Shown here: positions 1,631-63,885 of the stretch, one piece after another
Numbering within the stretch: position 1 is the first letter of the stretch
Layout of the letters: each line of letters opens with the position of its first letter
Source: Styela clava
Lineage: Eukaryota
NCBI RefSeq assembly: GCF_964204865.1
Contig: NC_135251.1
Span: 17,484,001-17,548,000, forward strand
Direction: 5' to 3'
Length of the DNA stretch: 64,000 nt
Notes under the pieces: model-generated
Told to the model about the DNA's origin: nothing
Seen by the model: only the letters and a program-made list of their open reading frames with translations
Database searches by the model: none
Translations under genes and position numbers: made by a program

Positions 1631-4600
1631 GTTTGTGATGGTATTGTTGACTGTCGTAACAGCTCGGATGAAACGAAAGAACTTTGCGGCAGTAAAAGAT
1701 TTTTCTGTCCAGCCCTTGGAGGGAAAAAGGTTGCAAAATAAACTCAATATTTCAGAGTATAATAGGGAAACTAGTATTTTGATTCAATCTAAATCTGATT
1801 TTCATGGGGCGTGAATTAGATTTTCATGCCTTCAACTGTAATTTCTTTTGTTTGATGAGGAGCTAATTTATATTTATGTCAATCAAAACATTTTTCACTG
1901 TTACTTACTGTTATTTAATATTGTTTGTTGACGCCACCTTAAAATGCTTGTGACACACGTGTGAGATATTGATATTTGAAGGTTAGCATCGATATTGGAC
2001 TTAAATGCGATTTCTGGATAGCTTGCGATGATGAAACAGATGAAATGAACTGCACTGATGACAGATTCAACTGCGAAAATAAAAAACCGTTATTTGTTCT
2101 GGCAAAGCAGGTAAAATATGTACAAATTATAAGAGAGCATCCGCTTCTGTTCTTCATAATATTTTGATGAACATCTAGGTTAAGTGAATATAGAGGGGCC
2201 TCTGTGACTGGCAAATAATTTTTGATGTCCCGGAGTGTAGTCACATCCACAGCCTGATAGCCGTTTTTGCCACAAGGAGTATATAATTGTAGCATACTTT
2301 GTTTTATTTTTTCAAGGAATTAGATTACAATAGCTCATATATGAGTCATTCATTTAATTCAGACATTTGATGGGCGTGGTGACTGTACCGATTGGAGTGA
2401 TGAATGTCCAACAATTAACCAATCAACTGCAACCGACGGATTCTCTTCAAGATATGACCTTGTTGCAAATCCTATATTGAGAGCGATTGTTTGGATCATG
2501 GGATTGCTATCTATTGGTGGAAATGGGGTGAAAATACATTTGTATTCTATATTTTTATTGTTTCCAATCATATTTGTTTTGTATATTCCAAGTATGCCAA
2601 CAAATGACATTAGTTCTCGGGTTATAATTAAAATCTTGAAAAGACGACTCGACTAATGATTTTAATTGAATCTCCAGAGCCATACATTTGTTGCATTTTA
2701 CTACTTTTGTGTGTTCCATAATTTACAATTCTATATACCAAGTCATTTACATGCCGATCGGTTGGCCAAAGTTGCTTAAGAACATGCCTAAAAAAATCAT
2801 AAAATTTGACAGAACGAAACCTCCAAGAAGTAACCGAATCGATTTCCTGAATACATATTAATAAATCAAATTTGATTAAAGAAAGAAAGGCGTTTTAAAT
2901 TAAATTGTCAGTTTTATAATTTCTTGTCATCCTCAGACCTCTCATGTTCGCCTAATCAATTTAAAATTTACGTTTGTGAGATGGTCTGGTTATTCAGCAA
3001 ACCGGCATTTATTTTTAGCTTGTTATTATTCGTGAAACAAAAAGACTGATGAATAACAAAAGAAAAATGTCGGCAATGATGGTAGCAAACAAATTGTTAA
3101 TTTTGAACTTGGCTTGTTCTGACGTGATCATGGGAATATATCTCTTTTCAATTGGAATTTCTGGACTAGCAATGCAGGTAATACACTGCTCAAATCGTTA
3201 ACTTTGGTAGATAAAAATAACAAAGATTGATATTGAATGCACTCCAACATTATCTGTGTTTCTGCTGCCCAGGGCGAGTTTTTGATAATGATGTACCTTA
3301 TACCTAGGCTTACCATACGTCCCGCTTTAGGCAGGACAGTCCCGCTTTTAAGCATATTGTCACGCCGTCTCGACAAGTCAGTCAAAAGTCCCGCTTTGGC
3401 GTTCAGCCATTCAGCATAATACACGAACGTGTTCTCGTTACTGTTGTTGCTGTGTAGCTCAACACAAGCCTACTTACTGAAGGTGAATGCGTTATTCTGT
3501 TAGTTTCGTTGTTTCCCGCTAACATTGTTAGCAAACGTATCACATGTAAAATTAATTCTAACTGGTCCTGTTCGGACGTTCACGTGAATGTAACATTGAA
3601 CAGCGTCTTTTTGAAGGTGCTATCTACAAAAAAGCATGCTTGGGCGAATAAGTAAATTCTCAATGGTTGAAAACGGCAGACTATTTCATTATTCTTTATT
3701 TTTTTTGCTATACAAAAAAAATCTAAAATCGGATCATTTGTATCGTTATCGTATATTCCTTTCTATTTTTCGAATTGAACCCGATATTTAGACAGAGAAT
3801 ATGCGCATGAACTCTCGATGACAATATGGTAAATAAAGACAGCCGGGATGGCTTTAACTGTAGGCCTATGTAGTAAAATCGGAAACTGTAAAGTTACAGG
3901 ATCACAGCTAGGGGGTCGTGTCTTTGGAGGCGTCTCGCTTTGAAATCAAAAAAATATAGTAACCCTACTTATACCTAACTTCATGAATAATTTGGAGGGA
4001 TAAACAAATTATAAATGTTGGTATATATGAGAATGAATAAATTAAAGGTCAATTAAGAATGAATTGTTTGTATTATTGCGCTAAATCACGCAATGACCAG
4101 AGAAGCACATTGGCGGGGAAAGGCAGTCAGTCATTGCTGATTCATGGACTATGGACTGACTAACATTGCTGAATATGAACCTTTTCTACGTGGGATATTA
4201 AGCAGTTTTATTAAAATAAAAATAAATCAGACAACCATTCCTCTTTTGCAGGGCGTTTATTGCTCAAAAGATTTAATTTGGAGATCCAGTACTACATGCA
4301 CCATACTGGGAGTATTGTCTGTTCTTTCAGGCGAAACTTCAGTTATTACAATGTTGTTGCTGACAAGTTGCCGAATATATTCAATTTATAGAGTGAGACC
4401 TTTTATCATTTCAGTATGACTGTATGAATGCGGAAAGCACCGTTTTTTATTCATTGCTTTGCTATAAATATATTGTCGTTTACATACCGGATCGTATAAA
4501 GATTCGTAAACATTTTCTAACAAAAAGCTGAAATGTTTGAACGTGTCTGTTATCCAATCACAGAACAACTACATTCGAAATGCATTTTTTTTTAAACTTT

Positions 4601-6727
4601 TTTTCTGGCGTAGGCTAAATCAAGTCCAGGACCCAAACTGGACTGTAAATCCAATTCCCGATTCATTTGAGCGTTAGTCGCACTAACCCCTAGTAGGCAT
4701 TCATATATTACTTTTGAAGACACCCAAGTCCTCGATTGTCTGTATACTTACATTAAAACGTTAATTTTCCAGTTACTCTTTCGTAAAAAATTATGAAAAA
4801 GTTTGGTAATTTAACCTCTGCACACTCCATATATACATGGTTGACATACGCGACCAAAGAATAAAACTGCGCTGTCCTGTTTTGTCAACGAGCCTATATT
4901 AATTCATTCGCACTTACAGCCAAATAACTACTAAGTTCTAACTTCTATTTATGAACATCTAGCCTTTCAAATCATCTCGTCATCCACAAAAGAAAACTGT
5001 ATTTTTGATGATATTGCTTGCCTGGGGAATATCCTTATTAATTGCTACACTCCCGCTGTCACCAAGTTTATCTGGAATGTTCGTCAGCCATGCAGAATTT
5101 GAGTATTCTCCATATTCTTCAAACGCAACTGTTACACAAGACAACACTAAAACACTTTTTAAGAGACTTCTTACATATGATCTGAAACCGAATACGACAT
5201 TTCCAGGTGATGAGACTAGTAGACCTCTGCCTCGAAAAGTGTTGTTATTGACTTTAAAAGCCCTACTTTGAGACCACAAGTTAAAAAAAAACCAAAATAT
5301 ATACTGCAGTTATGTACATCAAATATATTTGATCCAAAACATATGAGCAAGAAATTATGCAAAATTCATAATTTTTCTTAATTTACTTAATTTTTACTAG
5401 TCAAATGATAAGTTTAGCCACAATATGCTGTCCTGTAACTGGAATTATTCCAATATATATTTATTTAGATAACCTCAAAATTATATTTGGACAGGTTTTA
5501 TAGACGAGTTTGCAGAACTACATCATTATTTTAAAGATCTTCATGTATAGAAAATCGAATCTCGTTCATTAATATTTTGTTTCCAATTCCAGACAAGTTT
5601 TCAGTCACCAACTTTCAGTCATGGAAAGATATTGAATCCGAATCAAAAAAGTATTTTAACCATGAACATTTCAAGATTAAGAGAACATTTGGGTAAAATA
5701 TTCATTGAATAATCACCATTTTTTGCACTGTAAACTGTGTGAACACCATTATGTTGAAGTAAGAATGTTCGACAACGCGATGTCGTAGCCGGAGTCGATT
5801 TTTTTTTCAATCTGAATCTGATTTCAAGACGTTGGTCAACTAGTAATCGGCTACTTTTTAAAGAATTGGAAATCAGGAGTGTGAGAAGTAACTTCATTCA
5901 AACTCCACAGTTTTAGTTAAATAATGGGTTAAAAATGCTAGAGTTCAGGGTTTCTGAAACAAAGCCAAAATAGTTACAATTTGCTGCAATACTTTCTGAT
6001 CTATATTTTTTATAAATTCTGCCTGTAAATGGATCCGGTGATTTGATAAAACCATACCAAAATGTAACAAAAAGGTAATTTCTTATCTTCAGATTGCAGT
6101 AAATCAAGTTCTGTTATTTTCAGGTATTATAGTGTCGACAGCGTTTGCATCCCCAAATTTTTTGTGTCTAAAGAAGATCGTGCTTGGCCTTTCTCTTTCG
6201 CTGTTAACGTTTTCAACTTTTTTGCTTTCGTGTTTGTTGCATTCTCCTACGTCGCAATTTATATCAAATCAAGCGAAAAAACAAGTCTACGAAAATCTTC
6301 ATTGTCTAATGATAGAGACGATGAAAATAGAAGTAAGAGAAATTTCAAATGTTTTTTCGTTCCTCATATTTTTAGAGTGTTCTAACTTTTTTTTAATAAA
6401 TTTTTTCATTCTCGGTTATTTTCAGCAATGCAGCTGAAAATTCTCCGACTCATCATAACTGACTTCTGTTGTTGGATACCGATCTGTATCATGGCCTTCT
6501 GTAAACTAGGAGGAGCAAATGTTTCAAATACAGCATATGTCGTCGCAGCAATCGTGCTTCTACCGATTAACAGTGCATTAAATCCAGTTCTGTATTCAGA
6601 CCTGCCAGATGCTTTATATAAGAAAGTGACCACTGGATTTAATGAAATCACAAGCTTGACAAGTTCTTTTTTCACCGCGTCGACCAGTATAAACGTGAGA
6701 ACAAATGGTGAAGAAAGTACGTTGTAA
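1631..6727 (+). CDS. Multi-LDLa, LRR-less RXFP/LGR-like (GRL101-related) class A GPCR, copy A; 5' part not in window
   Basis: Phase-consistent GT-AG exons 1631-1729, 1982-2110, 2363-2527, 3019-3177, 4252-4392, 4963-5206, 5593-5692, 6124-6332, 6426-6727. They encode LDLa motifs (VCDGIVDCRNSSDE, CDFWIACDDETDEMNC, FDGRGDCTDWSDEC), hinge/TM1 DGFSSRYDLVANPILRAIVWIMGLLSIGGN, TM2 LNLACSDVIMGIYL, ECL2 YYSVDSVCIP, TM6 DFCCWIP and TM7 PINSALNPVLY. Exon lengths match B and C. Confidence 0.9.
3305..3967. mobile_element. hAT-type MITE (TAGGGTTACCA-like TIR) in a gene A intron
   Basis: TIRs TAGGCTTACCATA / TATAGTAACCCTA. Perfect 8-bp TSD CTTATACC (3297-3304, 3968-3975). Empty site in paralog D at ~62656-62663. 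Confidence 0.85.
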
Positions 6728-9700
6728 GGACGGATTGGTGACAAGGAACAATCTAAAAAAAAAAAAAAAAATAAGAATTTTTTTTATCTCATGACGAGAT
6801 GGCGGAGACTACTATTTGTTCTATATGTAGTGTTATATAAAATATTATCGTTCAAATTTATTTGTACAAAATTCATAAATGTAAATTATATAATTTTTTT
6901 TGTATGTATCAAGAAAATCTAGCTCCCAGACTGCATCTGTGTTGATGATCTGGTATTTCACTCAGGAGTCTGTAGTTCGTAATTTAGGAACGTATACGTA
7001 CGAAACGTATACAGACTCTATATATTACCTGCATGAAGAACATTGAAATCAAACTAGCAGGCGCCATGGGGCCGATGCAGTCAAACATCGCAAGATTCAA
7101 AATTGTCAGATATTTTAAATTTGATTGAAAAGAAGATGATGATATGTTTGTTTACATGCTATAGAGCGAATGAATTACTCCCGGAAACATTTTTTACCCA
7201 GCATGCCAACATCATAATATTTACGAGGACAGTTTCATTTCTGATGGAAGAATGTGCATAATTCTTCAAGGTGGTGCGATTCGCGCTTGAAAATTACTAT
7301 TCTAGATTCTTACAATGTTATCTATCGGATAAACGTGCAGTTATTCAATAAACTATTCAGATATTAAGAACAGGATCATTCAAATCCACGGACAAATAGC
7401 CATGTATACGTAATTTTACTGTGTGGCCCAGTGATTTTTAGGTGAATATCAAGGTGGTGAGAAATTGCGCTAACTTGCAAGCTACATCGTGATCACAAGA
7501 ATTAGCTGAAAGCACACTTTTTGATGAAATCACTGATATAGATTATATATAATTAAATTGCATTTTTAATTCGCTATACATAACTAACAGCCAACAGTTT
7601 ATTTGAACTGAAATGCAAGCACATTTAATTTTCAAAATCCATCAATGAGAAAAATGCACCCTATTGGTTTGGCAATCTTCGAGTCATTGAGTTAGGAATC
7701 AGGAGATCTATTCTTTGTTGAGAATCTCATCAAAGGCAGCAAACGTATGCCGAGGAACATCTATATTTGATTTTGTTGACCTTTATATATAATATATTCA
7801 TACATGAAAATTATTCCAGTAGAGGGGACCTTTTAAGTAAACCAACGCCTTCTCGTAGAACATAATTTTTCCTTTCCGCATTTAAATTGTCAAAAGTATA
7901 TATTACAAATAATGTTTTCAGGTAACAAAACTCTATGCAGAATAGTACGAATCGGAATTTTTCGCATTTTATTGGCTTGTGGCTTCCGCTGGCATTGCAC
8001 GTTACGATGACACGCCGTCCGCTGTTTGCCGCCCTAAACATTAACTAATGTATAAGTACCCAAGTGAGTTTTGTTCTTATCTACAGTAGCTCTAGAAGGG
8101 CATCATATATATTGCGTTGAATACTGTTTTATTATGACATCATTACTTGCTGTTTTGAAACTTACGGAATGTATCAGCTTGTTTATAACATCAACAAACA
8201 TCATTTCAACTATAATGAATAATTAAATTTCTATGTGAATTAATTGAAAGTAATTCAATTTTATTTCCTTTTTTGACAATAAAAAAAGATTGAATTGGTG
8301 GAATCGTATATAACAACATACTGATTCGTACATACTGGAGGTAGAAAGGTTGTTTTTGCCAATGAAGCTACGTTTGATGAATGCTTGCAAGATGTAGATG
8401 GTAGAAGGTTGTTTGTTGTTAAAACTTAGGACCATGAATGACCTGGTATTTAGCTTAGAAAAAGTTGTTTAAAGTCGGGTCGGATTTTTTGAATAGAATA
8501 GCGATTAGATTGAGATTTGTTGGAAATTGTTTAAAGATATCTTCTTTGTATATATAACATTTCGGGACGTCTTCAAATATATTGAATTGAAGCGATATTG
8601 AATTTCTTCAAGTTATTTGAAATATACGAGTCTGAAAAAATTTCAACTCTGATCTCGTTGTCATGGTTAGTGAGTTTGGTTCTGAGAATTTTTCAGTAGG
8701 TAGTCAAGCACTCAGTGCACACCAGTGCCCATCAACGACATATATATCGGTGTTTGTGACACCCAGCAAAACTGTTTTTATATTAAAATTTCCGAAACAT
8801 CGAAGTTCAGTTTCATGAAAACTAATATGGAAACGCCGCTCGGTTACCATTTATTGTGCTTAAGTGCCTTTGTTGTTTTGTTAGCAATTAAATGAAAGAA
8901 ACTTTCAAAACGTCTTTCTGATGAACTTTATCAAATTTTCACGTCTTATGACTATAGAAGTGGCCATTACTACTATAGGGGCTATTGATCCTTTCTGCGT
9001 GTCCACACCCCCGTGTTATTGAACACACGTTAACAGAGTGTAACTCCGATCTGAACTCCCTCAGAGTTCAATAAGCACACAATGTACTGAATGCCGATGT
9101 TTTTATATTGTAAAGATGCACAATCCAATTGGTCCAAGTAACAGGTAGCGAATTACACTTAAAACCTTAATGCAGTTATGTGATGAAACCAAATTACTAA
9201 CTAACAAAGAACGCTCAAGACAAGCAACACTGAGCGAGGGAAATAAATCCTGAAGGAAATAAACTAGAGCAAGGACCTTGTTTCAGGCGAATAACATGCA
9301 CTATTATCAATACGTGGTGAAAATATTAAAATATACAGTGACTACCCCAATGTACTCGCTACACTACTTGGCTTACGGACACATGGCTTACGGACACAAC
9401 AGTAAAGGTTTTTCAACTCCAAATACGACTTGTGCTTCCGACTACAATACTGTACTGTACATTACTCTACAAGTAAATTTCTAAGGGTTTCATAGTTTGA
9501 TCGTTGGTAAAAAGTACCAAATCAAGTCTCAGTTATACTGTATATTAACTGTTGTTGGTATATATCAATTTTACTCGACACGTATATAAATTATGTCTTC
9601 AACAACGCGTATTAAAATGTGATAGTGTCTTTCGTATAGATCATTTACATGAAGTTAACCAAAATTTAGTTTAATTACTCTGACATGACAATGTACCATG

Positions 9701-11881
9701 TAGTGTTGTCAGATTAACCTATACCATCAGCATATTGATTTCATATGACCTTAAATTCTGAACAGTATTCTAAATTTAAACTGTATTTTGAATTCCATTC
9801 AGTGTTATAGCCAGCGACGTCTTATTCTGTAACAGAAGTCAGGCTTTTATTTCAGTAAATGTGTCGGTATGAATTATATTCTATTCGGCTGTGCGTAAGA
9901 ATTATGCAGATTAAGACTGGACACAGAGGGAAATAAGTTTTTATGCGCGGGGAATATAAAATATGTGGCTACTTTGAATGAGTTGTATTTTACTGTACGT
10001 CGTAATGACGAATACGTATCTATATTTATCACTCGTCTGAATGTATGTTTTACGTCTCCAATCTGTGCACGATCAGTGTTACAAATATAAATTACATATT
10101 AGACAGGTAAATGCCGAAGAAGTATGCTTAACAGTTTTATACCTTTCAATAATATATATAGAATAGGTTTAAATGAAGAAACGAGTGTGTCGATTGAAGT
10201 GATATTTTTATAAATAGGTATGACCGTATGAGTAGGATATTGGATTGTATATGCACACGTTTTTCGGAACATAAGCCTACTAAATGCAATTTTTTGTCAT
10301 CGAGAGGAGCTACAATCGCAGTGGATATAACCTGCTAGAATACAATTCTATCAACGAAAGCATCGTTTTGTCATCGAGGGTCAGCTATGGACAGTCACAC
10401 ATGCTCGGCTATTTCACCAAAGTTACAGAGTTGATTGACAAAATGACAACTTTCAAGGCAGTCCTGAATTGAAATATTACGCCTACAAATCACTCCTCAC
10501 CGCAGTTGTTTGCAGCCCCTGGGAGACATTCTTGCCCTACACTGATCGCATGTTGTCGACCTATTCTTCGTGTAAAAAGTGAACACAATAATATATACAT
10601 TGCAAATACAGTGAGTGACGCGGTGATATGTGCATTAGGTAGTCTGTCAAGGATGAAATTATGCCCAAGGCTACGGTTCCTATGGAAAAACGGTTCCTAC
10701 GGTTCCTTGTAACTGGTGGATAACCAACCACAAGTTCGATAAGATGTTAATGATAAAAACCGTTTTAACAGTTGTCAACACAAAGATACTTATTTATTAT
10801 ATATATACGCGTTTCCTGTTGCTTACAATTGCTTTCCTGATTGAGCATCAGTCGACGCTTGCGACAGATGACCGTTGTATTGATGCATAGCGGAAGCGTT
10901 TGCATGGTTTACAAGACGCTATCTTTCCAACTACGCAGCAGATTATTGGTGTTTTAGAAAACAGAATTTTGAGCAACCTTTTCTAAGGCACTAGCGATAA
11001 TACTTAAGGAGGAATCATGAAATACAGAAGACTAGACACAATTGTGGATAGCCACGGTTCGTCACACTTACTGGACACCAATAGTTTTGTAATTCGATAA
11101 TATCCTGGATTAAAGCTGAATTTGATCTAGCAGAATTAAGTTTCTGAAAGCGCCATCAAGAGATGAGCGTATGGTAGAAACTGTACCGTTTTTGTTGTTC
11201 TATAGTTTTGCAAATACAATTACCTGAAAAGCACTGATCAGTGATAAAGATTTTGCAATAACAATTTCTGTGTATTAACAGGCAGACACAGTCACAGTGC
11301 AACTATGTTGTCGAACGAGTTGGTATGCGAAATAATTAGAATAGGCCTGAAAACTTTTTTGTCTGTTTTATTTGAAGTTACAAACAATAAAGGGTTAGGA
11401 ATAATTTATTCGATTGTTATTTTCGTTCTCATATTATACAGTTTTCGTGCGACTGAAGTGCATTCGACTTATCCCAATTATCATACAAGTATTATGAACT
11501 GAAAATATTGTTTATCTATATTATTTAAACAGTTTTGATGACAATCACACAGTGTCTTGAAATATTAATAACTTGGAGTCAACACCTTACAGTTTTCGGC
11601 TGATTATTTTGGATATTTGAGAAGAAAATTGCTACATAAAACTAACAAAATATGACAATATCCAAAACTTCGTTTTGTAGTACCAATATTCGAAATGGAC
11701 AAACAAAATATATTTTCCGATTATTGGTGACATGTTTTTGCAAAAAAGTAACTTCGCTTATTCTTTTACAGAAAATGGTAGTTTAAGTTATGTTATAACA
11801 AATAATTCGAAGTACGTAAAATTACCTCGGGTAACTTCATGCACACCTCTAAAATTGTGGAAAATAATACTCAAAACAAAA

Positions 11882-14800
11882 ATGAAAAGCACGTTTATAT
11901 GGATTATCACTCACTATATTTTGACGGTGAAATTTACGGCCTTTGCCAATATAAACGACACAGGTACGCACTTATTTCTTTTCGTCAAATACTGAATTTC
12001 GGTTAATTAATTTACAGGTAATACAAAGGTCATTCATGCTTCCTCAGTCGATATCTCAGACATTCTCAGGCAATCAATATACCTAAAAAAAATTGAAAAT
12101 ACATTTTATTCTGTGAGCGCCAATTGTATTTTTCATTTTGATCAGAAATACACGAGGTAATAATGATCAAGCCGAGATGTCTTGAAAATGAAACGGTGTT
12201 TCACACATTATTTTGCAATGATAAACTAAAATGCAAAGATGGGATTCCAATACAAGATGTTTATGCTGAGTGGCAAATGTAAGTATATTTCTTTTGTATA
12301 AATGCTCTTGACCTAAGATTATCACGAATTCAGGATATCATATACAATCAGTCCTAACCCGTTCTTGGAATGTTATGACATTAGTCAAATCGCTTCTTGT
12401 TTTTACAGCTATAAGTTCGGTTTTCGAAAATGAGGGAACCCATTCTTTTAGTGAGTTCAATACAAAAGGGAGCCGGTTTTTGAAATTTTAAATTCCATCA
12501 CTGTGTTTAACTGTCATTACTATTTCTGTATTCACATTCCTCCCCATATTGTTCGTTAATTTCCCGTCTACAGATTGAAATTTATAGGCTGGATCTAAGC
12601 TTAAATTGATAATGGAATAGTAAACGAATGCCTTTGTGTAAATAAGTTATTATATTATATTCGGAGGAATTCTTCCATAAAAATCGGTCATTAGATCTTA
12701 TTTTTGTTGTCATAAACATAAAGTGTATCCTAACGTCCCAGAATGTGTCAGTTTGTCCGTAGTGCAAAATCATGTGATCATGATATCCCGTCCGAATCCC
12801 GTCATCTGTGTCTGTGGGCATCAAATCGTTTTAGTATTGAACTATCGTTTTAACGTTTTCCATTAACATATTCACATATTTTCAATATCAGATGCGAATC
12901 GTTGAGGAACAGCAAAACGCAGTATTGTGTGGTAGAAAGAGACGAAATATGCAAAGAGAAAGTCGTATGTTCAAACATGAACCCATGCGATGCAAGATGT
13001 GATTCTCATTATAAATGTCAGGTGAAAGATTCAAACACTTTTGTTCCAAAGAGAGATTCAAAAGTCTCTGGTGCTCTATTTTTAGATTTACTAAATGTTC
13101 TATGAACAGTTTGTTCCATTCATAACTCCCCACGACTTGTGGTATTTATTACTAGGTTTAGTAATAAAAGGGAGATTTTTTTCACTCGTGCTAAAGGTTT
13201 GCTTAGACTGTAGGTGTGAACTATGGCCCCACCGCGTGTTCTACCCCAGTAATATTAAACGTACTTCAGCGGAGTAACCCCACTGACTCCTTCAGACGTC
13301 AAGAAGCACACAATAACGTGTTGTCAAATGTTCGTATATTGCGGAGTTGTACAATCGAATTTAAATCTATTCTAGAGCATACATATTGAAATATACTCTT
13401 AATTAAACCCGAATACGAGGTATGCAGTTGAAATTCAAAACAGCAATTCAACAAAGAGAATATCAAAAACACTATATTCTTAACGCTCGGACAGAGGCCG
13501 GAACAAGTCACAGATCGGTCGATACAAAGAAATCTCAGCATAAAGATAAATCTTTCGCTACGATAACTGAAATGACCTATTTCCATAGAATTTAACATGC
13601 TATTACTACGAAGGTGTTAAATTACACTAAAATCCATAGTTACATTCTACATTCGTTGCAAGACATTCAGTTGACCGGTTTGGGGTTAGGGTTAAATTGG
13701 GAATCTTGAACTCACGCTCACACGACCACCACATTATCTACTAAACGACACAAAATTGAAAAAACGCTATCCTGTCGCTTTAAAATTTCCTACTTTTCAA
13801 TGTGATAATGTAGATACCAATTTAATGTGATGTATTGAAGAATTCAGAATGCAAGCTTCGTAGCACGGTATGCAATAAGAATGCGTGCGATGGTTGCACA
13901 GAAGAAGATCATGAATGGAATAACGGAATCGGATTCAAATGCCGGAGAAATGACGAGGATTGTGTCCTGCCTCAGCAATTAATTCACGATGACATAGCAG
14001 ACTGTGATGGAGGTGCAGATCTATGTTTTGAAGCTCAATATCATCTGAATAATAGTTTAAGGTGAGTCGATATCCTATTTTGAACCTGAATCAAGATGTT
14101 TGATCTCGATATTTCAAATTACGGAAATTGCCGTTCTTTGCAATCACATCACTTCTCCCCCTACATTTGATACAACACAACATCTGAAAGATTTTCGTTC
14201 CTAAATGGAAGTAAGCTGGCCCAGCCATAACTCGCGTGGCTCACTTCGTTCGTATTGTTCGTTCTAAAATGACCATCTTCGCTGTTAATGTTAAATATAA
14301 ACCCCTTTCCAAGTGGCATTGTTTGTCTTTGGATGGCATTGGTTTTGGATCTTTCGAACTTTGGATTTTTTTGTGATATGCATATCACATTTACTTTTGA
14401 GAACATAAAATTCCTTTTTGAAGCACACCTCTACACTTTCAACTGTAATATATTGTGTGATATAAACCATCGATTTGAATAATTATTCGTTATTCGAGTC
14501 ATTTGTATGCTTTAGTTTGTTTATTAATATGACATAAGATTACCAAAAGTAATCAATTAAATAATAACCAAATTGTGAAATTCATACTTACAGGCGCACG
14601 TATTTATTGCACAAATACTTTGTTACTTTTTGTAACAATTAAATGTCTCAACATTTGGATATGACATGTCTGGGATTTTTCTGATTATCATTACGAATAT
14701 ATTCGTGCGATAAAAATTGACGTTTTATAATGACGTGGAATAGTTTAAATATATTCAGATATTTTTAGCACGACATTCACAGGATTTACATATTCCTTCA

Positions 14801-17800
14801 CAAAGATCTTTTTTAAAAATTTAAAATTTTTTTGTATCAAAACTATAAAGTCTAGATTAAAATGTTAAATGATACGGTACTATGTCATACATACTGAGAA
14901 ATGTATGAACTGCGCTGACCTAGCGCAGGAATGGACAACTGGCTCGTCATATTTTCTCGGCGACCTGCCAAGTCAAAGATCATTGCAAAATAAGTGAATA
15001 TTGATGAAAAGGTATATAATGAGGATGGCCCTAATTCCCACCCACGGTAGGTTAGATCTAGCAGCTATGGCGATTTTGCCACCGTTCGTTCTTTTTTTGA
15101 ATTTAATTAAATTCGAGATTCTTACAGTTCGAATGACTTCGTCTTTCCAGTTTGTAAGTTGGAATGATATGATGATAAACTCCCGAGAGATTGCCGTTTG
15201 GAAAACAAAATTTAAGTCCTATAGTAATGTTCACGGTGATCTGAAACATAAATGATGCTGGATGGTATAAGTGATTTTAATAAAGTTGAAAGTCGAAAAT
15301 AGAATTCTCTCGGAGTAGAATTTCCTATCAAACTCATCATTTTTTTTTATGCAATGGTGCCACTCAGATTATTTCAAGATAAAACTGTCTGATCCCCGAG
15401 TCTGCTATAAAATCTCATGAAGTAAAAACAATTTTTGTACAATGAAAATTGATAGAATATGCTTTGTGATATTAATTGTGATATATATCATCATTCATCA
15501 CGAACCGGAAATAATTTGCGTTTCCAACCTTGTATAATGTTAACAATAAAATTTTCGACGGCAATTGATGGATTAATTAAAACGTAAATGCTGCGCACAA
15601 TTGACTGCGTTTCGACTTTAGTGACGGTATAGTCCCCAACGCCGAGCAAATACAATGTGTGCCATAGGCACACGAGATTCTGCTGTTACTACGCCTAGAA
15701 AAGTGTTTTTTATTTGCCGCGGGCCTCCTACAACAAATTGTTTACGGTTTTATTTTTAATATTTTATATTGCCGCTTTTCAATCAAAAAATTTTTGTCGC
15801 CGATTCACTCCTTTATTTGTCTTTAGCAATTCGCCACCAATGAATGTACAATAACTCTCAATGTATTCACAATTCTGTGCGAGTACAAAATCAAAGTATT
15901 TATCAATCACCGTTGTCGTTGCACAATTTTTGTGATGTAGGGAAGTAGGCACTAACGTGAAGGTGTTTACGGCCTAAATAACACGTCACGCTGACAAAAA
16001 CAATCGGCGTTTTAACAAAATGCAATCGCACGCGTTATTGGGGACTTTCTCAAATATCCAAAAATTTCCAAAAAAAGGGGCTGGCTGGCCTGGCTACGCC
16101 ACTGCGTCAGCCTATAGGTTGCATTGCTACGCCTAGTGAAAGCTGTTTTAGCCTAACAATATACACCCATCGCACCATCGTTTGCAATCAGCCCAGTCTA
16201 AACGGCATTTTGCAATCTCGTGCGCGATGAGGACTTACATTTGCGAAAGCACTCTTTCAGTTATAAAAAGACTAAAATCGTTTTATATTTCACTTATTTG
16301 ATTGTTCACTTATTCCTGGCAATATTGTGGTCCGCGAACCATGCAATTTTTTGTGGCTCCAGATTCCGACAACCTTGGACTACCCCGAACCAGAATATGC
16401 CCTAACGTTGATTTTTGTGATAACCATTTTTATAATTCTCAAAAAGTTAAAATAGTTGACGAGTAAAATATCAGGGAAACTTCCGCTAACGTTATAATTA
16501 TATTACCAAGATAAATGTGGTAAAACATGACAACGTAACAGTTATAATTAGGATTAGTTTGCAGTTGTGAGAAACTGCTCTTTTTTGTAGCAGTACTTGA
16601 CATTAGAATAGTTTTGACTAGAAGGATTCCAAACTGTTACCTTTGGCTTCTTTTTGCCCGTCTTGTTTATAATACCGGTGACGAAATGCAGGAAGGTAAA
16701 AGACAAGGATTATATTTTTTGCGGAGAAGATACAACAGCAAGTTTCTCGTAAACATAAAATTGAATAAATCTACGACTCACAATCTTCTTTTTCCTGATT
16801 TAAAATATAATATGTTATGTGACCCATTCGGTAGAAAAAATTGGCAATCCCAGGCCTAGTGGTCAAAATAGTATTAGCATATGACTAATCTCGGGTTCAA
16901 TTACCATACCCATTATCTAACCCAGATTGTAGCTCCTTATATAAAAGTGGCCGATTTTACACAGAGCCTTGTATGTAGTAGAAGGCGTCGAAAAAAGTAA
17001 TAGTAAAAAGTCTTCTCTCGTTTATTAGCCTAAGCCATATACTACATAACATTCAAAACATACATAACAGGAGTACTGAATGAAATATCAAGACACGAAC
17101 AATATTATATTATACACATGATCATAATGTAAAGCACAAACTTTTTTAATAATTTAGAACAGAACATCAACATCGTGAACATCTCAATCTTTTAAAATGT
17201 TTCATGTGCTTGAATGACGTCACCGTGATTGCTTCAACAAGTGTTTGTGACGGAATAATAGATTGTCCGGATCTATCTGACGAATGTCTTTGTGATAAAA
17301 GTCGACCTAGAATTTGCGAACAAGTGATTTCATATGATGAAAATGTGAGAAAATACTGTTTTAGTTTGTATGCGGGGTTCAGGGACAGATTACGACGAAT
17401 GACACTTATCCATGTCAATGATTCCTTATTTTGTGCTGTAATATTGTTTGTACTTGGCTACCCAAAGTCATTTACTTGATATTTCGCATCGTTAAATCTA
17501 ATTAACGTTTTATTAGTTACTGTATGTAAAATTGTATAATTTATTGTTATTTACAGGGATTTATTTCCTTACCTCTGGTTGCATCACCAACTACAGAGAC
17601 CGGACTCACCATGACATGGTATGTAGTGCCACCAACTATGAGTGCTCTCGGGTATTTATATTATGTTTGTATTCCAAAATTCCGAGTACAAGAGTAATTA
17701 ACTTTCTCCTTTAAAAAATATATTCATTGTACTATTGGCAACAAATTGCTTCAGGTCAAAATATAATAGCTTATACAGCATAAATTATTGTGGTGGCGGC

Positions 17801-47156: not shown

Positions 47157-48811
47157 AATCACTGCTGGTGTTATCTGTAATGGATTCAAAACGCAGACAT
47201 GAAAGCCAGTGCATGAACAGCAACGTTTATTGTTAGGCAACTGATTTTGCCATAGATATTTTTATTCAGATGATATTATTTTGCACGTTATTGCTTTTTT
47301 TCTTACAAACTTGAACCACGGATCTCTCGTGGATCCTGTATCTTCACTTGATAGCATATACATCTACCTCTACTTTTAATAATTAATTCTCTGCTAGGCT
47401 CTATGACCAACAACCGAATGGTCTTATTCGGCAGAACATTGTTACCTCAAAACATTGACGATTCACTATATTACACGGTGTGAAAAATTTGATTGGCAAG
47501 TGAGGATCCATATGATTGGGGGTATCGTATCTGCTATGAATTAAAAAAGTTTGGCAAGTAGTTGAGCAGAAAATGGAAATGTTGTGCAGAATTTGGTACG
47601 AGGTAAATCGCAGGCGATACATAAGATATTCTAACAAATCTTAATAGTAACAAGTTCTCTCAAAACAAAGATTTGGTTTTACTCATTCAAGTTCACGCAT
47701 GCCTTCAGCCAAAGTCACCAAATCAATAAACAATAAATTTTTGAGCACTCATTGAGAAACATTCTGAATTTTCTTTTTCATAGAATCCATCCTCTAGGAC
47801 TGGTTTTCTCGTTCACGACGCCAGCATACTGGTAAACTTAGCTTTTCCCTGTTGCCAGGTCATATTTGAAATGATATATTTCATTCCCTCCTATTCCGCG
47901 TAATGCTCGACCATATGTATCGTTCTTGATCGAATCACAAGACAACTAGAACAGTATTATACATTAGAGTTAGACGATAGAAAAAAAATTAAGTGGTGTA
48001 GTCTTCACGCAGTGATACGAATTTTCAAAGGCAAAATAAAAATATTTTGCAACTTCTTTATATCCTACCGTGGTTATGATTTGAATTTTTCTTTATTCTT
48101 TAGAAATTTCAATATCCTACTAAATTAAATAAATCCCAATTTCCTAAGTTTTTTTGATAATCTCATTCCTATCATAAACTATGGAGCAGCGATGTCTAGT
48201 CCGCGGGAGGATTTGCTAGCGAATCTCATATACCTTATAATGAAATTTAAGAGTAAATCTAAGCCTGCAAAGCTAAGGTAAATGCAAAACCCTTCTTGTA
48301 TTTGTATCTTCGCGACGCACTATCATACAAAAATCCCGCAATCGAAGCATATTATGAGCTTGATGGCACACAAACAAAGGTTCTGTTAGGCATACGTCTA
48401 GAGAACAACAAGGAGAGACGCAATTCGACAATTACAAAAAAATTACGGAAACGTATTTTTTATTCAAGTTAACGACATGGCCGTTTGTTTTTAATACTTC
48501 ATAAATCTCTATTGGCCTTCAAGTGTTAGATATTTGAAAAAAAAATTGGAGTTCACGCGCAATAAATGTACGGGAAAAAGGCGCCGGAAAGCGAAAAGTT
48601 TATTTACTATCGCTAAAAGGCGTTTTGAAGGAGCACCAAAATGCTTTACTTAGTCCTACCTATTACAAATATCGAGGACTAACTGCTAGTTTGAATCTTT
48701 TTTTTTTCTAAAAATAGTCATATAACACTGACCAATTACGAAGGACAGCATCAAAGGTTCCAGTCGATAATAAACAAGAGAGCAATGCTGAAATATATTG
48801 ACACGCAATTC

Positions 48812-48924
48812 GGACCTCCTGAAGTATGCGCACGCGCAGGATGTCGCATAACCTGAACCCTAACCTGGTACACAACCTGAGTTCAGGTTGTGCGCCATCT
48901 TGGTGCGCATACTTCAGGAGCACC
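48812..48924. mobile_element. Palindromic MITE, paralog of 27152-27261 with inverted core
   Basis: Same TSD CGCAATTC and same outer ends. The internal segment is the reverse complement of the unit-1 copy. Confidence 0.7.
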
Positions 48925-49641
48925 CGCAATTCTATAAAAATCATATGCGGTAACTTACCAGTACTTGTATCGGTGTACCGTGACGATACAGGAACTGTCA
49001 TAGCTTTTTTAGGTTCTGTGACGATGATCAGTTCCTCATAATTCAGTTTCAACATCATTACGTGATCCGAGTAACTTCTGTATTAACATATCAGGTACAG
49101 CAGTCAACCATTTTCAATAACAAAGACGTCTCGAAGTCATGTGCGTTAATTTTCAGCACCTAGATAAGTATAAGTATGAGTATAACTAGATTTTCCCGCT
49201 AAAGAACCATACACAAAACACAAAAGATTGGGAAAATCAGGGAAAGTGGCAAAACCTTTATAAAGGTTTAATACATGTAAATATACATGCGCCAGTTTAC
49301 CCACAATTAACACACAAACATATATCCAAATGAAAAAGACACGAACGGGTATCGATCGGGCGTCAAACTTCTATAACATAAGCACTCGGTGGGTCCCAAT
49401 TATTAATAAATACACTTTGATAGGATGGAATGCATGGCTATGGTATGTGTATCACAACAGTGCTTTTTTTCTACTAAAATACGGAATAAAAAACACTCGT
49501 TGTCGCAAAATGGTGACGTTGTAGTTCAATTTCATTGCAAAAATAACACAGCGACAAAAGATTGTTACTAAAAAATCAAGCTTCGTAAATAGATTGAATG
49601 TTTGGCGTATCGAGTTCGTTTTGGATTAGTTCGATTTAAAA

Positions 49642-62231: not shown

Positions 62232-62443
62232 CTTCTAACAATCTTATTTTCGCTTCCAAACGTTCCTTTGTCCCCTGTTCGCCCCGATCACCGTTGTGCC
62301 TATTTTAAGTATGGTGAGAAATAAACTACTGATTACTGACTGATTACACCAGGCAGACCCCTCCTACCCTCTGGCCCCCGCTTTCCGGGTCTTCCTTGGC
62401 ACTGAGCAGCACATCTATGACTCGATGCAGTTTTGTCAGTCAT
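62232..62443 (-). pseudogene. Fragment of a short-collagen + coiled-coil neck gene (collectin/ficolin-like)
   Basis: CAAQCQ-GRPGKRGPEGRRGLPG (~62348-62413), then exon 62299-62232 (ag...|gtaagc) encoding GHNGDRGEQGTKERLEAKIRLLE. Intervening donor degenerate. No lectin domain identified. Confidence 0.55.
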
Positions 62444-62448
62444 TGAAG

Positions 62449-63885
62449 GTTTGTGATGGTATTGTTGACTGTCGTAACGGCTCGGATGAAACAAAAGAAC
62501 TTTGCGGCAGTAAAAGATTTTTCTGTCCAGCCTTTCAAGGTTGATATTGTATAGGCTACACTCCGACTGACGTCCAATTTCCAACATTACCTTTGTTGTG
62601 GGAGCGGGGGACAAACTTTTCTGCTGCCCAGGGCGAGTTTCTGATAATGATGTACTTTATACCTAAGTTCATGAATACTTCGGAGGTTAACAAATTATAA
62701 ATGTTGTTATATATGAGAATGAATAAATTAAAGGGCAATTAAGAATGAATTGTTTGTATTATAGCGCTAAATCACGCAATGGCCAGGGAAGCCCAATAGC
62801 GGGAAATTGAGTGGGATATTGAGCAGTTTTTTATTCAAATAAAAAGAGATCAGACAATGATTCCTCTTTGCAGGGCGTTTATTGCTCGAAGGATTTAATT
62901 TGGAGATCCAGTACTATATGCACCATACTGGGAGTATTGTCTGTTCTTTTAAGCGAAACTTCAGTTATTACAATGTTGCTGCTGACAAGTTGCCGAACAT
63001 ATTCAATTTATAGGGTGAGACCTTTTATTATCTCACTATAACTGTATGAATGCGGAAAGCAACGTTTTTTATTTATTGCTATGATATAAATATATACTTT
63101 ATTGTCGTTTACATACCAGATCGTATAAAGATTCGTCAATCTTTTCTAACGTATTATTTCAAAAGTACCAGAAAAGCTGGGATGCCGTTTGAACGTGGCT
63201 GTTATCCAATCACAGAACAAATACATTCAAAATGCATTATGATTTTTTTTTTAATTTTTCATTTTTGGCGTAGGCTAAATCAAAGGCAGGGAAGATTTAG
63301 GACACAAATTGGACTGTACATCCAATTCCCGATTCATTTGAGCTTCAGTCGCAGTAACCTCTAGTAGGCATTCATATATTACATTTGAAGACACCCAAGT
63401 CCTCGATTGTCTGTATATATACATCAAATCGTTCATTGTCTATTCGGGAAAAATTATGGAGAAATTTTGCAATTTGACTATTTCACACTCCATATATACA
63501 TGGTTGGCATACGCGGCCAAAGCATAAAACTGCGCTGTTCTGTTTTGTCAACGAGCCTATATTAATTCATTCGCACTTACGGTAAAATAACTACTAAGTG
63601 GCAATTACTAACAAAATTCTATTTATTAACACCCAGCCTTTCAAATCATCTCGTCATCCACAAAAGAAACTGTAGCCTATTTTTGATGATATTGCTTGCC
63701 TGGGGAATATCCTTCTTAATTGCTACACTTCCGCTGTCTACAAGTTTATCTGGAATGTTCGTTAGCCTCGCAGAATTTGAGTATTCTTCATATTCTTCAA
63801 ACGCAACTGTTACACAAGACAACACTAAAAACACTTTTTACGAGTCTTCTTACATATGATCTGAAACCGAATACGACATTTCCAG
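62449..63885 (+). pseudogene. Decayed A-type LDLa-GPCR copy D (probably continues beyond the window)
   Basis: LDLa exon 62449-~62540 joins directly to the intron following the TM2 exon, so three exons are deleted. TM3 exon 62874-63014. TM4 exon 63637-63885 has indels giving an in-frame TAG (~63674) and a later frameshift. Introns align with gene A. Confidence 0.88.

What the first reader, a model, noticed from the sequence alone, without database searches (positions are those of the whole stretch)
1631..63885. Birth-and-death cluster of LRR-less, multi-LDLa relaxin-receptor-like GPCRs
Seen: five related loci (two complete, one partial, two dead). The last LDLa module (DCTDWSDEC) runs within one exon straight into the RXFP-type hinge and TM1 (DGFSSRYELIANPILRAVVW). 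No exon in the 19-exon models encodes an LRR. Established: RXFP1/2 have one LDLa plus LRRs, GRL101-type receptors have many LDLa plus LRRs, and the LRRs carry the main hormone-binding site. Inference: these receptors recognise ligand with an LDLa array instead and evolve like a chemosensory or innate-immune family. This is the best candidate for an uncharacterised system here. From memory, LDLa-rich LGR-like expansions have been noted in ascidian GPCR surveys, so the family may be catalogued but functionally orphan.
Basis: partly seen in the sequence, partly recalled or inferred. Interest (0 to 1): 0.75.

Follow-up and report, generated by a model that had tools for sequence, protein, structure and literature searches.

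The report
Sea squirt LDLa-GPCR gene cluster
A tandem cluster of sea-squirt receptor genes joins a relaxin-receptor-like membrane part to a string of LDL-receptor modules with no leucine-rich repeats; it is real and transcribed, but the family was described in Ciona in 2008 and still has no known ligand.

Summary
The window (Styela clava, contig C2) carries five related loci on the + strand. One gene is cut only by the window edge, two are intact 19-exon genes, and two are dead remnants. One more intact copy lies just beyond the window.

One exon runs from the last LDLa module through an RXFP1-like hinge into TM1. Spliced contigs from public runs join the preceding LDLa exon directly to it. 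No LRR was found in the RefSeq proteins, in the 114 kb around the cluster, or in 120 listed relatives.

Among solved structures, RXFP1 is the best match for 3 of 4 family members tested. Only LGR-type receptors score at E <= 1e-10.

The family is not new. Kamesh et al. 2008 (PMC2396169) named it LDLRR-GPCR in Ciona. They reported 14 members without LRRs, an RXFP-like 7TM and haemocyte ESTs, and made the same ligand speculation. The scan also noted a similar gene elsewhere in this genome (s1-814908).

Gene gain and loss is supported. Rapid diversification is not: dN/dS is about 0.2 in both ectodomain and 7TM, and there are signs of gene conversion.

Details I did not find in that paper:
- a 68-85-residue ECL2 insert, present in 39 of 39 members;
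- no acidic residue at the E/DRY position, in 0 of 39 members;
- RXFP1's ECL2 and hinge self-activation motifs are kept.

The ligand and the mechanism remain inferred.

The parts
1604..6727 (+). Gene 0 (P0001 type, LOC120336918), 3' part only. Exons: about 1604-1735 and 1979-2113 (LDLa), 2360-2530 (last LDLa + hinge + TM1), 3019-3180 (TM2), 4246-4404 (TM3), 4963-5205 (TM4), 5589-5693 (ECL2), 6119-6330 (TM5), about 6428-6724 (TM6-7, then stop). The 5' exons lie upstream of the window.
   Evidence: tblastn of P0001 residues 454-980, with exons at 81-100% identity. Upstream exons are in L002. Open frames.
11652..25499 (+). Gene 1 (P0151 type), intact, 19 exons. In-frame cores: 11652-11705, 11747-11962, 12145-12276, 12893-13021, 13841-14062, 17168-17344, 17557-17619, 18367-18483, 19136-19414, 19658-19783, 20394-20495, 21973-22104, 22637-22807, 22986-23144, 23244-23387, 23503-23745, 24331-24432, 24917-25123, 25200-25496 plus the stop. 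Ends are good to about 3 nt.
   Evidence: 19 blocks of P0151. The seven introns from exon 12 to exon 19 are seen as GT..AG joints in contigs of public runs.
22637..22807 (+). Exon 13 of gene 1: C-terminal half of the last LDLa module (DGRGDCTDWSDEC), about 20 residues of hinge (…DGFSSRYELIAN…) and TM1, all in one exon.
   Evidence: The hinge aligns with RXFP1's hinge. Contigs cover 22637-22803 unbroken in 4 of 4 runs.
23503..24990 (+). TM4 exon, ECL2 exon (24331-24432) and the start of the TM5 exon. Together they encode an 81-residue insert in extracellular loop 2, ahead of the conserved GYYSxxSVC-I-P motif.
   Evidence: The alignment to RXFP1 skips P0151 residues 775-854. The insert is 68-85 residues long in 39 of 39 family members.
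27645..29100 (+). Orphan 3' fragment, a copy of the 3' end of gene 0. It holds a TM5 exon remnant at 27645-27775 (first ~70 nt lost, premature stop after …SSEKKSL), a ~600-nt dispersed repeat at 28040-28635, and a still-open copy of the last exon at 28801-29097.
   Evidence: No contig depth at 27300-27699 in 4 runs (contigs cannot prove absence).
34034..47156 (+). Gene 2 (P0151 type), intact. Exons 3-19 start at 34498, 35255, 35733, 39034, 39422, 40394, 41197, 41749, 42756, 43480, 43874 (LDLa-hinge-TM1), 44298, 44555, 44825, 45645, 46574 and 46857, ending at 47153.
   Evidence: Exon-by-exon alignment to gene 1 at 87-99% nt identity, with no stops. A start codon and a signal-peptide-like stretch lie in the open frame 33998-34414.
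62443..64000 (+). Gene 3, a dead gene 0-type remnant. It has an LDLa exon at 62443-62541, a TM3 exon at 62867-63026, and a TM4 exon at 63614-63909 with three frame-breaking indels. Exons 12-14 (LDLa, TM1, TM2) are absent. It continues past the window, with its last exon at window-equivalent 65125-65421.
5721..49118 (+). Two tandem duplication units of about 21.7 kb (5721-27464 and 27464-49118). Each holds the 3' end of a gene 0-type gene followed by a whole P0151-type gene.
   Evidence: Self-comparison by blastn.
24631..27464 (+). Tract that is 94.5% identical to 46303-49118, against about 80-82% for the rest of the units. It covers exons 18-19 and the 3' flank and is a probable gene-conversion tract.
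   Evidence: dS between genes 1 and 2 is 0.076 in 7TM exons against 0.213 in ectodomain exons.

Best explanation
What it is (shown). The window is part of a tandem array on Styela clava contig C2. The genes belong to the ascidian LDLRR-GPCR family: rhodopsin-class receptors with an RXFP/LGR-type 7TM. Their ectodomain is a chain of about 6-10 LDLa or LDLa-like cysteine modules, with no leucine-rich repeats. The whole array holds one intact gene 0-type gene, three intact P0151-type genes and two decayed gene 0-type remnants. It arose by repeated duplication of a ~21.7-kb unit. The intact copies are under purifying selection, and transcripts of this paralogue group are spliced as modelled.

How it most likely works (inferred, roughly 0.3).
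- The 7TM keeps the parts that let human RXFP1 activate itself. These are the ECL2 loop YY…V-C-[L/I/M]-P, disulfide-bonded to TM3, and the hinge pair L-I in front of TM1.
- In RXFP1 the LRR domain holds that loop in check, and removing the LRRs makes the receptor constitutively active.
- These receptors have no LRRs. So either they signal constitutively, or another part does the restraining. The candidates are the family-specific 68-85-residue ECL2 insert and the strongly conserved membrane-proximal LDLa module.
- I favour the second option. The distal calcium-binding LDLa modules would capture a large, basic-patch ligand such as a lipoprotein or a protease-inhibitor-type complex, as LDLR and LRP modules do. 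That binding would shift the proximal LDLa/hinge/ECL2 assembly and switch the receptor on.
- The cell type is probably the haemocyte, going by the Ciona ESTs reported in 2008. That was not tested here.
For: Identity.
- P0001 and P0151 are S. clava RefSeq proteins and map to the window.
- Contig lengths of G000 equal those on S. clava protein records: 22,065,457; 23,815,600; 25,446,714; 24,301,187.

Architecture.
- Pfam finds 7tm_1 and Ldl_recept_a only.
- 0 of the 120 listed relatives carries an LRR family in the precomputed Pfam column.
- There is no LRR in 114 kb around the cluster.

Clade.
- RXFP1 is the best solved structure for 3 of 4 members tested.
- The Atlas's structural neighbours are LGR, RXFP1 and GRL101 clusters, though every TM-score normalised by query length is under 0.4.
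- In the tree the window's two gene types sit in a Styela-only clade of 4 (SH-aLRT 95). That clade lies inside a 13-member ascidian clade (99).

Selection and expression.
- dN/dS is 0.19-0.21, with no stops in the 16 exons compared (3-19 except 9) across 3 genes.
- GT..AG joints for introns 12-18 appear in 2 to 4 of 4 runs.

Mechanism leads.
- The alignment to RXFP1 pairs the hinge and ECL2 motifs.
- In 39 family members the hinge is F34 S36 S35 … [L/M]38 I35. The ECL2 motif is Y36 Y38 … V35 C39 [L/I/M]38 P38. R3.50 is present in 39 of 39.
- Exon 13 is the best-conserved part between older paralogues (65-86% identity). The ECL2 insert and distal ectodomain are the most variable.
- The RXFP1 data come from sections 6-8 of bioRxiv 10.1101/2022.01.22.477343.
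- The family description and the haemocyte ESTs come from PMC2396169.
Against: - There is no functional data for any member, and the ligand is unknown.
- P0002's best solved match is TSHR/LHCGR (82.8 bits), not RXFP1 (80.0).
- I could not build a tree with named vertebrate RXFP1/2, LGR4-6 or GRL101, because no such sequences could be fetched.
- RXFP1's L566 position is R or K in 30 of 39 members. The GDxxGWxxxF motif needed for LDLa-dependent activation of RXFP1/2 is absent in all 39. The RXFP1 mechanism therefore cannot simply be carried over.
- The runs laid are only guessed to be RNA. At 30 of 31 listed exon places their contigs carry the letters of gene 2 and/or gene 4. They prove the splice pattern for the paralogue group, not expression of gene 1 itself.
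- No tissue information was available.
Confidence: 0.8

Rival explanations
1. Constitutively active receptors. With no LRR brake, the ECL2 loop sits in the orthosteric pocket all the time. The LDLa array would serve trafficking, endocytosis or anchoring rather than switching the receptor on.
For: An RXFP1 7TM domain without LRRs signals at 70% of Emax through ECL2 F564 and hinge L402/L403. The matching scaffold is conserved here. No member has an acidic residue at position 3.49 of the E/DRY motif (0 of 39). From general GPCR knowledge, which I recall rather than tested, that change often loosens the inactive state.
Against: A conserved-length ECL2 insert and a strongly conserved proximal LDLa suggest regulation. 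So does purifying selection on the whole LDLa array (dN/dS 0.20-0.23). About 27 loci of a purely constitutive receptor would be hard to explain.
Confidence: 0.2
2. Peptide-hormone receptors. Ascidian insulin/relaxin-like peptides or other small peptides would bind the LDLa modules, the hinge or the loops, as relaxin touches the RXFP1 linker.
For: The 7TM and hinge are closest to RXFP1. The RXFP1 linker after the LDLa is a weak relaxin site (abstract and introduction of bioRxiv 10.1101/2021.06.06.446989).
Against: The high-affinity LRR site is absent. The GDxxGWxxxF motif is absent in all 39. The family has about 27 loci in Styela, while the 2008 paper cites only three Ciona INSL/relaxin-like genes and argues that they use a tyrosine-kinase receptor. 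Styela has a separate LRR-bearing RXFP1-like gene, L011, with RXFP1 at 1.3e-52.
Confidence: 0.1
3. Annotation artefact: LRR exons exist but were missed, so these would be ordinary GRL101/RXFP-type receptors.
For: NCBI names some of them 'GRL101-like'. P0151's first 63 residues look mis-modelled.
Against: Contigs join exon 12 to exon 13 directly (3 of 4 runs), and exon 13 itself runs from LDLa into TM1. There is no LRR signal in 114 kb. 0 of 120 listed relatives from four ascidian species and from many unnamed assemblies shows an LRR family.
Confidence: 0.02

Closest known systems
Ciona intestinalis LDLRR-GPCRs (Kamesh et al. 2008, BMC Evol Biol 8:129, PMC2396169)
   Same: Both are ascidian. 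Both have 1-10 LDL-A repeats at the N-terminus, no LRRs, a TM region most like the INSL3/relaxin receptors, lineage-specific expansion and orphan status. Ciona proteins with LDLa + 7tm_1 fall in the same 13-member clade as the window's genes.
   Different: The species differs (Styela clava). Here there is a tandem array with remnants and a conversion tract. The 2008 main text has no occurrence of 'ECL2', 'DRY', 'pseudogene' or 'intron'. Its gene lists are in supplements I could not open, so one-to-one orthology is not shown.
RXFP1/RXFP2 (type C1 LGRs)
   Same: The 7TM is the best sequence match. The hinge (…SS…LL/LI…) and the ECL2 motif YY…VC-hydrophobic-P align. There is an LDLa module with a calcium-cage motif.
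   Different: There are no LRRs and no GDxxGWxxxF linker motif (0 of 39). There are many LDLa modules instead of one, and the last one sits about 20 residues from TM1. ECL2 carries a 68-85-residue insert. Position L566 is R or K. E3.49 is replaced by F, Y, C or L.
GRL101 (type C2 LGR of Lymnaea and other invertebrates)
   Same: Multiple LDLa modules ahead of an LGR-type 7TM. NCBI's automatic name for several members is 'GRL101-like'.
   Different: GRL101 has LRRs between the LDLa array and the 7TM, as described in PMC2396169 and PMC4079206. These genes have none.
LDL receptor / LRP family ligand-binding repeats
   Same: Arrays of calcium-binding class A modules with the acidic D-x-S-D-E cluster.
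   Different: Here the array is attached to a G-protein-coupled 7TM, not to a single-pass endocytic receptor. Several modules are atypical: Pfam recognises 6 stretches in P0151.
GPR52 (self-activated through its own ECL2)
   Same: A possible analogy: ECL2 acting as a built-in agonist, as Erlandson et al. discuss for RXFP1.
   Different: There is no sequence relationship. The analogy rests on inference only.

Membership tests
LDLRR-GPCR (ascidian LDLa-only RXFP-like receptors, Kamesh 2008) | Rhodopsin-class 7TM most similar to the INSL3/relaxin receptors | tested here: met
   7tm_1 at 2e-17. RXFP1 is the top solved structure for P0151 (8.1e-27), P0001 (8.6e-30) and Ciona P0012 (2.1e-31). For P0002 it is a near tie behind TSHR.
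LDLRR-GPCR (ascidian LDLa-only RXFP-like receptors, Kamesh 2008) | One or more LDL-A repeats in the N-terminal ectodomain | tested here: met
   Ldl_recept_a at 2.2e-10 with 6 stretches in P0151. Exon pieces of the window give LDLa hits.
LDLRR-GPCR (ascidian LDLa-only RXFP-like receptors, Kamesh 2008) | No leucine-rich repeats | tested here: met
   with positive controls. Exon 12-to-13 joints in contigs.
LDLRR-GPCR (ascidian LDLa-only RXFP-like receptors, Kamesh 2008) | Groups with the 14 Ciona members in a tree | tested here: inconclusive
   The genes group with Ciona LDLa + 7tm_1 proteins. The 14 Ciona identifiers are in supplements that were closed, so identity with that set is not shown.
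Type C1 LGR (RXFP1/2) | LRR domain carrying the high-affinity hormone site | tested here: not met
Type C1 LGR (RXFP1/2) | Single N-terminal LDLa followed by a linker with GDxxGWxxxF | tested here: not met
   Motif found in 0 of 39 family members, and 0 hits in the six frames of the window. Multiple LDLa modules are present.
Type C1 LGR (RXFP1/2) | RXFP-type hinge and ECL2 self-activation loop (Y556 Y557 … C563 F564 P565 L566; L402 L403) | tested here: inconclusive
   YY, V, C, a hydrophobic residue and P are kept in 35-39 of 39, and the hinge [L/M]-I in 35-38 of 39. The L566 position is R or K in 30 of 39, and an insert of 68-85 residues precedes the loop.
Type C2 LGR (GRL101) | Multiple LDLa modules plus LRRs before the 7TM | tested here: not met
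   LDLa modules are present and LRRs are absent.

The most novel reading that the evidence does not exclude
In this LRR-less branch of the relaxin-receptor lineage, the autoinhibitory job of the LRR domain has passed to a family-specific 68-85-residue ECL2 insert working with the membrane-proximal LDLa module. The receptors would then be self-activating RXFP-type 7TMs, gated by what the LDLa array captures: large basic-patch ligands such as lipoprotein or protease-inhibitor complexes in haemolymph. That would be the first GPCR class to read LDLR-type cargo directly.
Probability: 0.15. Interest if true: 0.65.

Novelty: new member of a known kind. Interest (0 to 1): 0.3.

Why it matters
The family is a natural experiment on how relaxin-type receptors work. 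Human RXFP1 without its LRRs is constitutively active, and ascidians have kept dozens of such LRR-less receptors under purifying selection. Finding their ligand would test a long-standing idea, raised for GRL101 and again in 2008, that some GPCRs sense lipoproteins or other large protein complexes through LDLa modules. Finding their basal activity would show how an ECL2-driven receptor can be regulated without LRRs.

For this window alone the gain is modest. It gives a clean, annotated example of tandem gain, decay and gene conversion in a family that is already catalogued.

Tried and rejected
Single-exon searches.
- Pfam on single exon pieces gave only weak LDLa and 7tm_1 hits, because the modules are split across exons. 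I then worked with the full-length RefSeq-derived proteins that a search with the last exon returned.
- My first LDLa regex on open frames found nothing, for the same reason.

A tree with named vertebrate references.
- I wanted a 7TM tree with named RXFP1/2, LGR4-6 and GRL101.
- Two searches with Styela's LRR-bearing RXFP1-like ORF gave 6 and 2 hits, none named RXFP or GRL101. Sequences of solved structures cannot be fetched.
- I therefore used rankings against solved structures and a tree rooted on five LRR-bearing receptors. In that tree the LDLa-only versus LRR split is partly set by my choice of root.

Other checks.
- Tissue-resolved expression was not possible. Run records are coded and carry no library text.
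- tRNA and Rfam scans of the window found nothing. The very deep spots in the read table at 27100-27299 and 27700-27899 lie on or beside dispersed repeats, not small RNA genes.
- Positive selection: only pairwise Nei-Gojobori counts on three young paralogues were made. No site model was run.
- I considered whether the orphan 3' fragment could serve as alternative 3' exons of gene 1. I rejected this. Its TM5 exon has lost its 5' part and acceptor and has a stop, and no contig lies on 27300-27699.
- Literature: six searches found no functional study of these ascidian receptors. The library lacks most subscription journals, so this is not proof that none exists.
- The supplements of PMC2396169 (gene lists, EST tissue table) were closed. 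The haemocyte claim rests on its main text alone.


Full report
WHAT IS IN THE WINDOW

The window is G000:C2:17484001-17548000 of a 377-Mb genome. GC content is 32-38% and there are no N runs. A self-comparison shows two tandem units of about 21.7 kb, 5721-27464 and 27464-49118. Further related pieces lie at 1966-5324 and 62657-64000.

WHICH ORGANISM AND WHICH GENES

I searched the last coding exon of the second locus (window 25200-25496, 99 residues) against 1.84 billion representative proteins. This gave 1486 hits at E <= 0.001. The best two are full-length proteins of 980 and 1019 residues.

A word-based search with the first of these, P0001, named it and its relatives. P0001 is 'uncharacterized protein LOC120336918 isoform X3 [Styela clava]'. 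P0151 is 'G-protein coupled receptor GRL101-like isoform X2 [Styela clava]'. The other named hits are from Styela, Clavelina, Phallusia and Ciona. Contig lengths of G000 equal those recorded for S. clava RefSeq proteins. The window is therefore from the Styela clava assembly that NCBI annotated.

GENE MODELS

- P0151 maps to 11652-25496 in 19 co-linear blocks. This is gene 1.
- P0001 residues 454-980 map to 1604-6724. This is gene 0. Its residues 5-466 map 2.6-6.9 kb upstream of the window, so the gene is whole in the genome.
- Gene 2 (34034-47153) matches gene 1 exon by exon at 87-99% nucleotide identity. Exon lengths are the same except for an in-frame 6-nt difference in exon 9.
- A fourth intact gene of the P0151 type lies beyond the window, at window-equivalent 70381-82013.

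Searches were made exon by exon. Full-length work used the stored RefSeq-derived proteins.

THE TWO DEAD LOCI

The stretch 27464-29475 copies the 3' end of gene 0.
- Only 131 nt of the TM5 exon survive (27645-27775). The part that encodes the ECL2 cysteine is lost, and a stop follows …SSEKKSL.
- A ~600-nt dispersed repeat sits at 28040-28635.
- The copy of the last exon (28801-29097) is still open.

Gene 3 (62443 onward) keeps an LDLa exon, the TM3 exon and a TM4 exon with three indels of 1, 5 and 1 nt. Nothing in 62301-63100 matches exons 12-14 of gene 0. Its last exon lies just past the window.

The 'partial' locus is an effect of the window edge.

NO LRRs

- Pfam on P0151 at E <= 10 lists 7tm_1, Ldl_recept_a (6 stretches) and two weak chance hits, but no LRR family. 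A mollusc relative run in the same call gives LRR_8 at 2e-105.
- In three Pfam runs on relatives, 18 of 19 full-length proteins have LDLa + 7tm_1 and no LRR. The exception is the snail (Bulinus) protein P0065.
- None of the 120 listed relatives of P0001 has an LRR family in its precomputed Pfam column.
- A genome-wide LRR_8 search listed 150 of 173 matches, none within 20 kb of the window or inside it. Only 150 of 526 candidates were scored.
- tblastn with six LRR ectodomains against 114 kb found nothing better than E = 0.22. The best hits (E 0.22-0.37) lie on an LDLa exon. The five foreign queries among them hit Styela's own LRR-bearing locus at 1.7e-8 to 8.9e-27.

TRANSCRIPTS

One search for public runs found 13 holders. 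Nine of them held 12-23% of the sampled words of a 6-kb stretch that is about one quarter exon, and were guessed to be RNA. I laid four of them, from three studies, on 21900-27899. Their contigs show GT..AG joints at every modelled intron from exon 12 to exon 19:

| Joint | Runs showing it |
|---|---|
| 22101>22637 | 3 of 4 |
| 22803>22985 | 4 of 4 |
| 23141>23244 | 3 of 4 |
| 23384 or 23387>23503 | 4 of 4, in two forms (one lacks GT..AG ends and has three other letters between) |
| 23743>24329 | 2 of 4 |
| 24430>24915 | 2 of 4 |
| 25124>25198 | 3 of 4 |

The LDLa exon 12 is thus spliced straight onto the LDLa-hinge-TM1 exon.

There is a caveat. At 30 of the 31 listed exon places where the contigs differ from gene 1, they carry the letter of gene 2 and/or gene 4. 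Most contigs therefore come from those paralogues, or from converted alleles. At the exon-12 places, runs X2 and X3 carry gene 1's own letters at six of the seven (X3 at all seven). Contigs cannot show absence, strand or level, and no tissue labels were available.

PLACEMENT OF THE 7TM

Against all solved structures, P0151's best match is RXFP1 (7tmw, 8.1e-27). TSHR (3.9e-24), LHCGR and FSHR follow. Non-LGR receptors start at 1.5e-8 and LGR4 comes at 6e-5.
- P0001 and Ciona P0012 prefer RXFP1 by more than 40 bits.
- P0002 scores TSHR and LHCGR 2.8 bits above RXFP1.
- In all four searches only LGR-family chains pass 1e-10.
- The Atlas's structure search lists LGR, GRL101, RXFP1 and TSHR clusters as nearest models, at TM-scores (by query length) under 0.4.

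I built a quick maximum-likelihood tree of 45 7TM regions: 40 ascidian LDLa-only proteins and 5 LRR-bearing receptors used as root.
- P0001 and P0151 come out as sisters (SH-aLRT 99).
- They sit inside a Styela-only clade of four (95).
- That clade sits inside a 13-member clade with Ciona, Phallusia and Clavelina proteins (99).
- Clavelina has its own run of duplicates.

I could not add named vertebrate RXFP1/2, LGR4-6 or GRL101.

SIZE OF THE FAMILY

The last exon finds 83 places in the genome at E <= 0.001.
- 28 of them are at E <= 1e-10.
- 12 are at 71% identity or more: six in this C2 array, one on C5, four on C13 and one on C4.
- I sampled ten more distant loci. All ten have 7tm_1 in one long open frame. 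Seven have Ldl_recept_a at E <= 0.001. Two more start with a visible LDLa half-module. One (L011) has LRR_8 and is Styela's RXFP1-like gene, with RXFP1 at 1.3e-52.

HOW THE COPIES EVOLVE

I counted Nei-Gojobori substitutions exon by exon over exons 3-19 except exon 9 and summed the counts.

| Pair | dS | dN | dN/dS |
|---|---|---|---|
| Gene 1 vs gene 2 | 0.140 | 0.030 | 0.21 |
| Gene 1 vs gene 4 | – | – | 0.19 |
| Gene 2 vs gene 4 | – | – | 0.20 |

- The ectodomain exons give 0.20-0.23 and the 7TM exons 0.17-0.28.
- Exons are 87-99% identical, against about 76-85% over most of the remainder of the units.
- The 3' tract 24631-27464 is 94.5% identical to 46303-49118. dS between genes 1 and 2 drops from 0.213 in the ectodomain to 0.076 in the 7TM. 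This fits gene conversion.
- Between older paralogues, the LDLa-hinge-TM1 exon is the most conserved part (65-86%). The distal ectodomain (43-64%) and the ECL2 insert (down to 23.5%) are the least conserved.

The picture is gain, decay and some homogenisation under purifying selection. It is not measurable diversifying selection.

WHAT IS KNOWN

Kamesh, Aradhyam and Manoj (2008, PMC2396169; passages and section 14 read) describe the 'LDLRR-GPCR' family in Ciona. They report:
- 14 confirmed members with 1-10 LDL-A repeats;
- no LRRs;
- TM regions like the INSL3/relaxin receptors;
- grouping with human LGR7/8 and snail GRL101, apart from LHCGR;
- most EST matches from blood cells and haemocytes.

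They speculate that the receptors bind lipoproteins or large protein complexes.

Their main text does not mention ECL2, DRY, pseudogenes or introns. Six literature searches found no functional work on the family.

The scan itself holds a note on a similar gene elsewhere in this genome (s1-814908). I did not test it.

LEADS ON MECHANISM

Erlandson et al. (bioRxiv 10.1101/2022.01.22.477343; abstract and sections 6-8 read) report the following for RXFP1:
- ECL2 (Y556, Y557, C563, F564, P565, L566) fills the orthosteric pocket in the active state.
- Hinge residues L402 and L403 support it.
- A 7TM domain without the LRRs signals at 70% of Emax.

The HMMER alignment of P0151 to the RXFP1 chain pairs TDGFSSRYELIAN with TDGISSLENLLAS, and GYYSVDSVCIPKF with NYYGTNGVCFPLH.

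Across 39 ascidian family members:
- The hinge is F(34) S(36) S(35) … L/M(38) I(35).
- The ECL2 motif is Y(36) Y(38) … V(35) C(39) L/I/M(38) P(38) R/K(30).
- R3.50 is invariant.
- Position 3.49 is never D or E (F16, Y12, C4, L4 and others).
- 68-85 residues are inserted between TM4 and the YY motif in every member.

The GDxxGWxxxF motif that RXFP1/2 need after their LDLa (abstract of bioRxiv 10.1101/2021.06.06.446989) is absent in all 39.

From this I infer, without any test, that the self-activating ECL2 core is retained. The missing LRR brake is then either not replaced, giving constitutive receptors, or replaced by the ECL2 insert together with the proximal LDLa. In the second case the distal LDLa modules would act as the ligand trap.

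VERDICT

What this window adds is a well-resolved Styela tandem array with remnants and a conversion tract. It also adds three family-wide features I did not find in the 2008 paper: the ECL2 insert, the loss of the acidic E/DRY residue, and retention of RXFP1's ECL2 and hinge motifs. Together these make a concrete, testable question about how an RXFP-type receptor works without LRRs.

Noticed in passing
window 49645-49983 (- strand): An open frame of 113 residues carrying a complete LSM domain (Pfam PF01423, 1.3e-18). It looks like an Sm/LSm small nuclear ribonucleoprotein gene or retrocopy, lying between gene 2 and gene 3.
   Followed up: partly
window 56086-58982 (+ strand): Open frames of a non-LTR retrotransposon. 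The 276-residue frame at 57513-58340 has a reverse-transcriptase domain (RVT_1, 1.2e-25). The neighbouring frames of 184 and 189 residues have no Pfam hit.
   Followed up: partly
window about 27150-27262: A dispersed repeat of about 110 nt that matches itself on both strands, so it is MITE-like. The genome search gave 2055 first-look candidates, of which 40 were scored, at 91-99% identity on the + strand. In the RNA-like runs it gives summed contig depths of 8,000-36,000, with loose ends on both sides. There is no tRNA or Rfam match.
   Followed up: partly
window 28040-28635: A dispersed repeat of about 600 nt (1552 first-look candidates, 40 scored, mostly 91-95% identical). It is inserted in the orphan fragment between its TM5 remnant and its last-exon copy, and is absent at the matching place in gene 0.
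   Followed up: partly
window 18572-18634 (gene 1); 40599-40661 (gene 2): An open 21-residue exon (…CRGTVPCS…KCR) that matches P0001 residues 317-337. It is skipped in P0151 (isoform X2), so it is probably a cassette exon inside the LDLa array.
   Followed up: no
window 11652-11962: The first 63 residues of P0151 precede a signal-peptide-like stretch (MKSTFIWIITHYILTVKFTAFA). The model also has a 41-nt 'intron' at 11706-11746. The true start is probably the later methionine.
   Followed up: no
L011:952-2967 (- strand; G000 contig C9): Styela has a separate LRR-bearing receptor in one 672-residue open frame (LRR_8 at 9.8e-19, 7tm_1 at 2e-23). Its best solved match is RXFP1 at 1.3e-52. It is a candidate true relaxin-type receptor to compare with the LDLa-only family.
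   Followed up: partly
P0024 (Pleurobrachia bachei) and Atlas clusters: The LDLa + 7tm_1 architecture without LRRs also occurs in ctenophore gene models. P0024 (1060 aa) has a 7TM that hits the window's last exon at 4.1e-18. Two Atlas clusters of 79 and 91 members are mostly ctenophore. The architecture may therefore not be an ascidian-only invention, or it may have arisen twice.
   Followed up: partly
window 21973-25496 versus P0151 and public contigs: P0151 and the public contigs are mosaics of gene 1, gene 2 and gene 4 letters. For example, P0151 has gene 2's residues in exons 8 and 15. This fits ongoing exchange between the paralogues, or allelic variation.
   Followed up: partly
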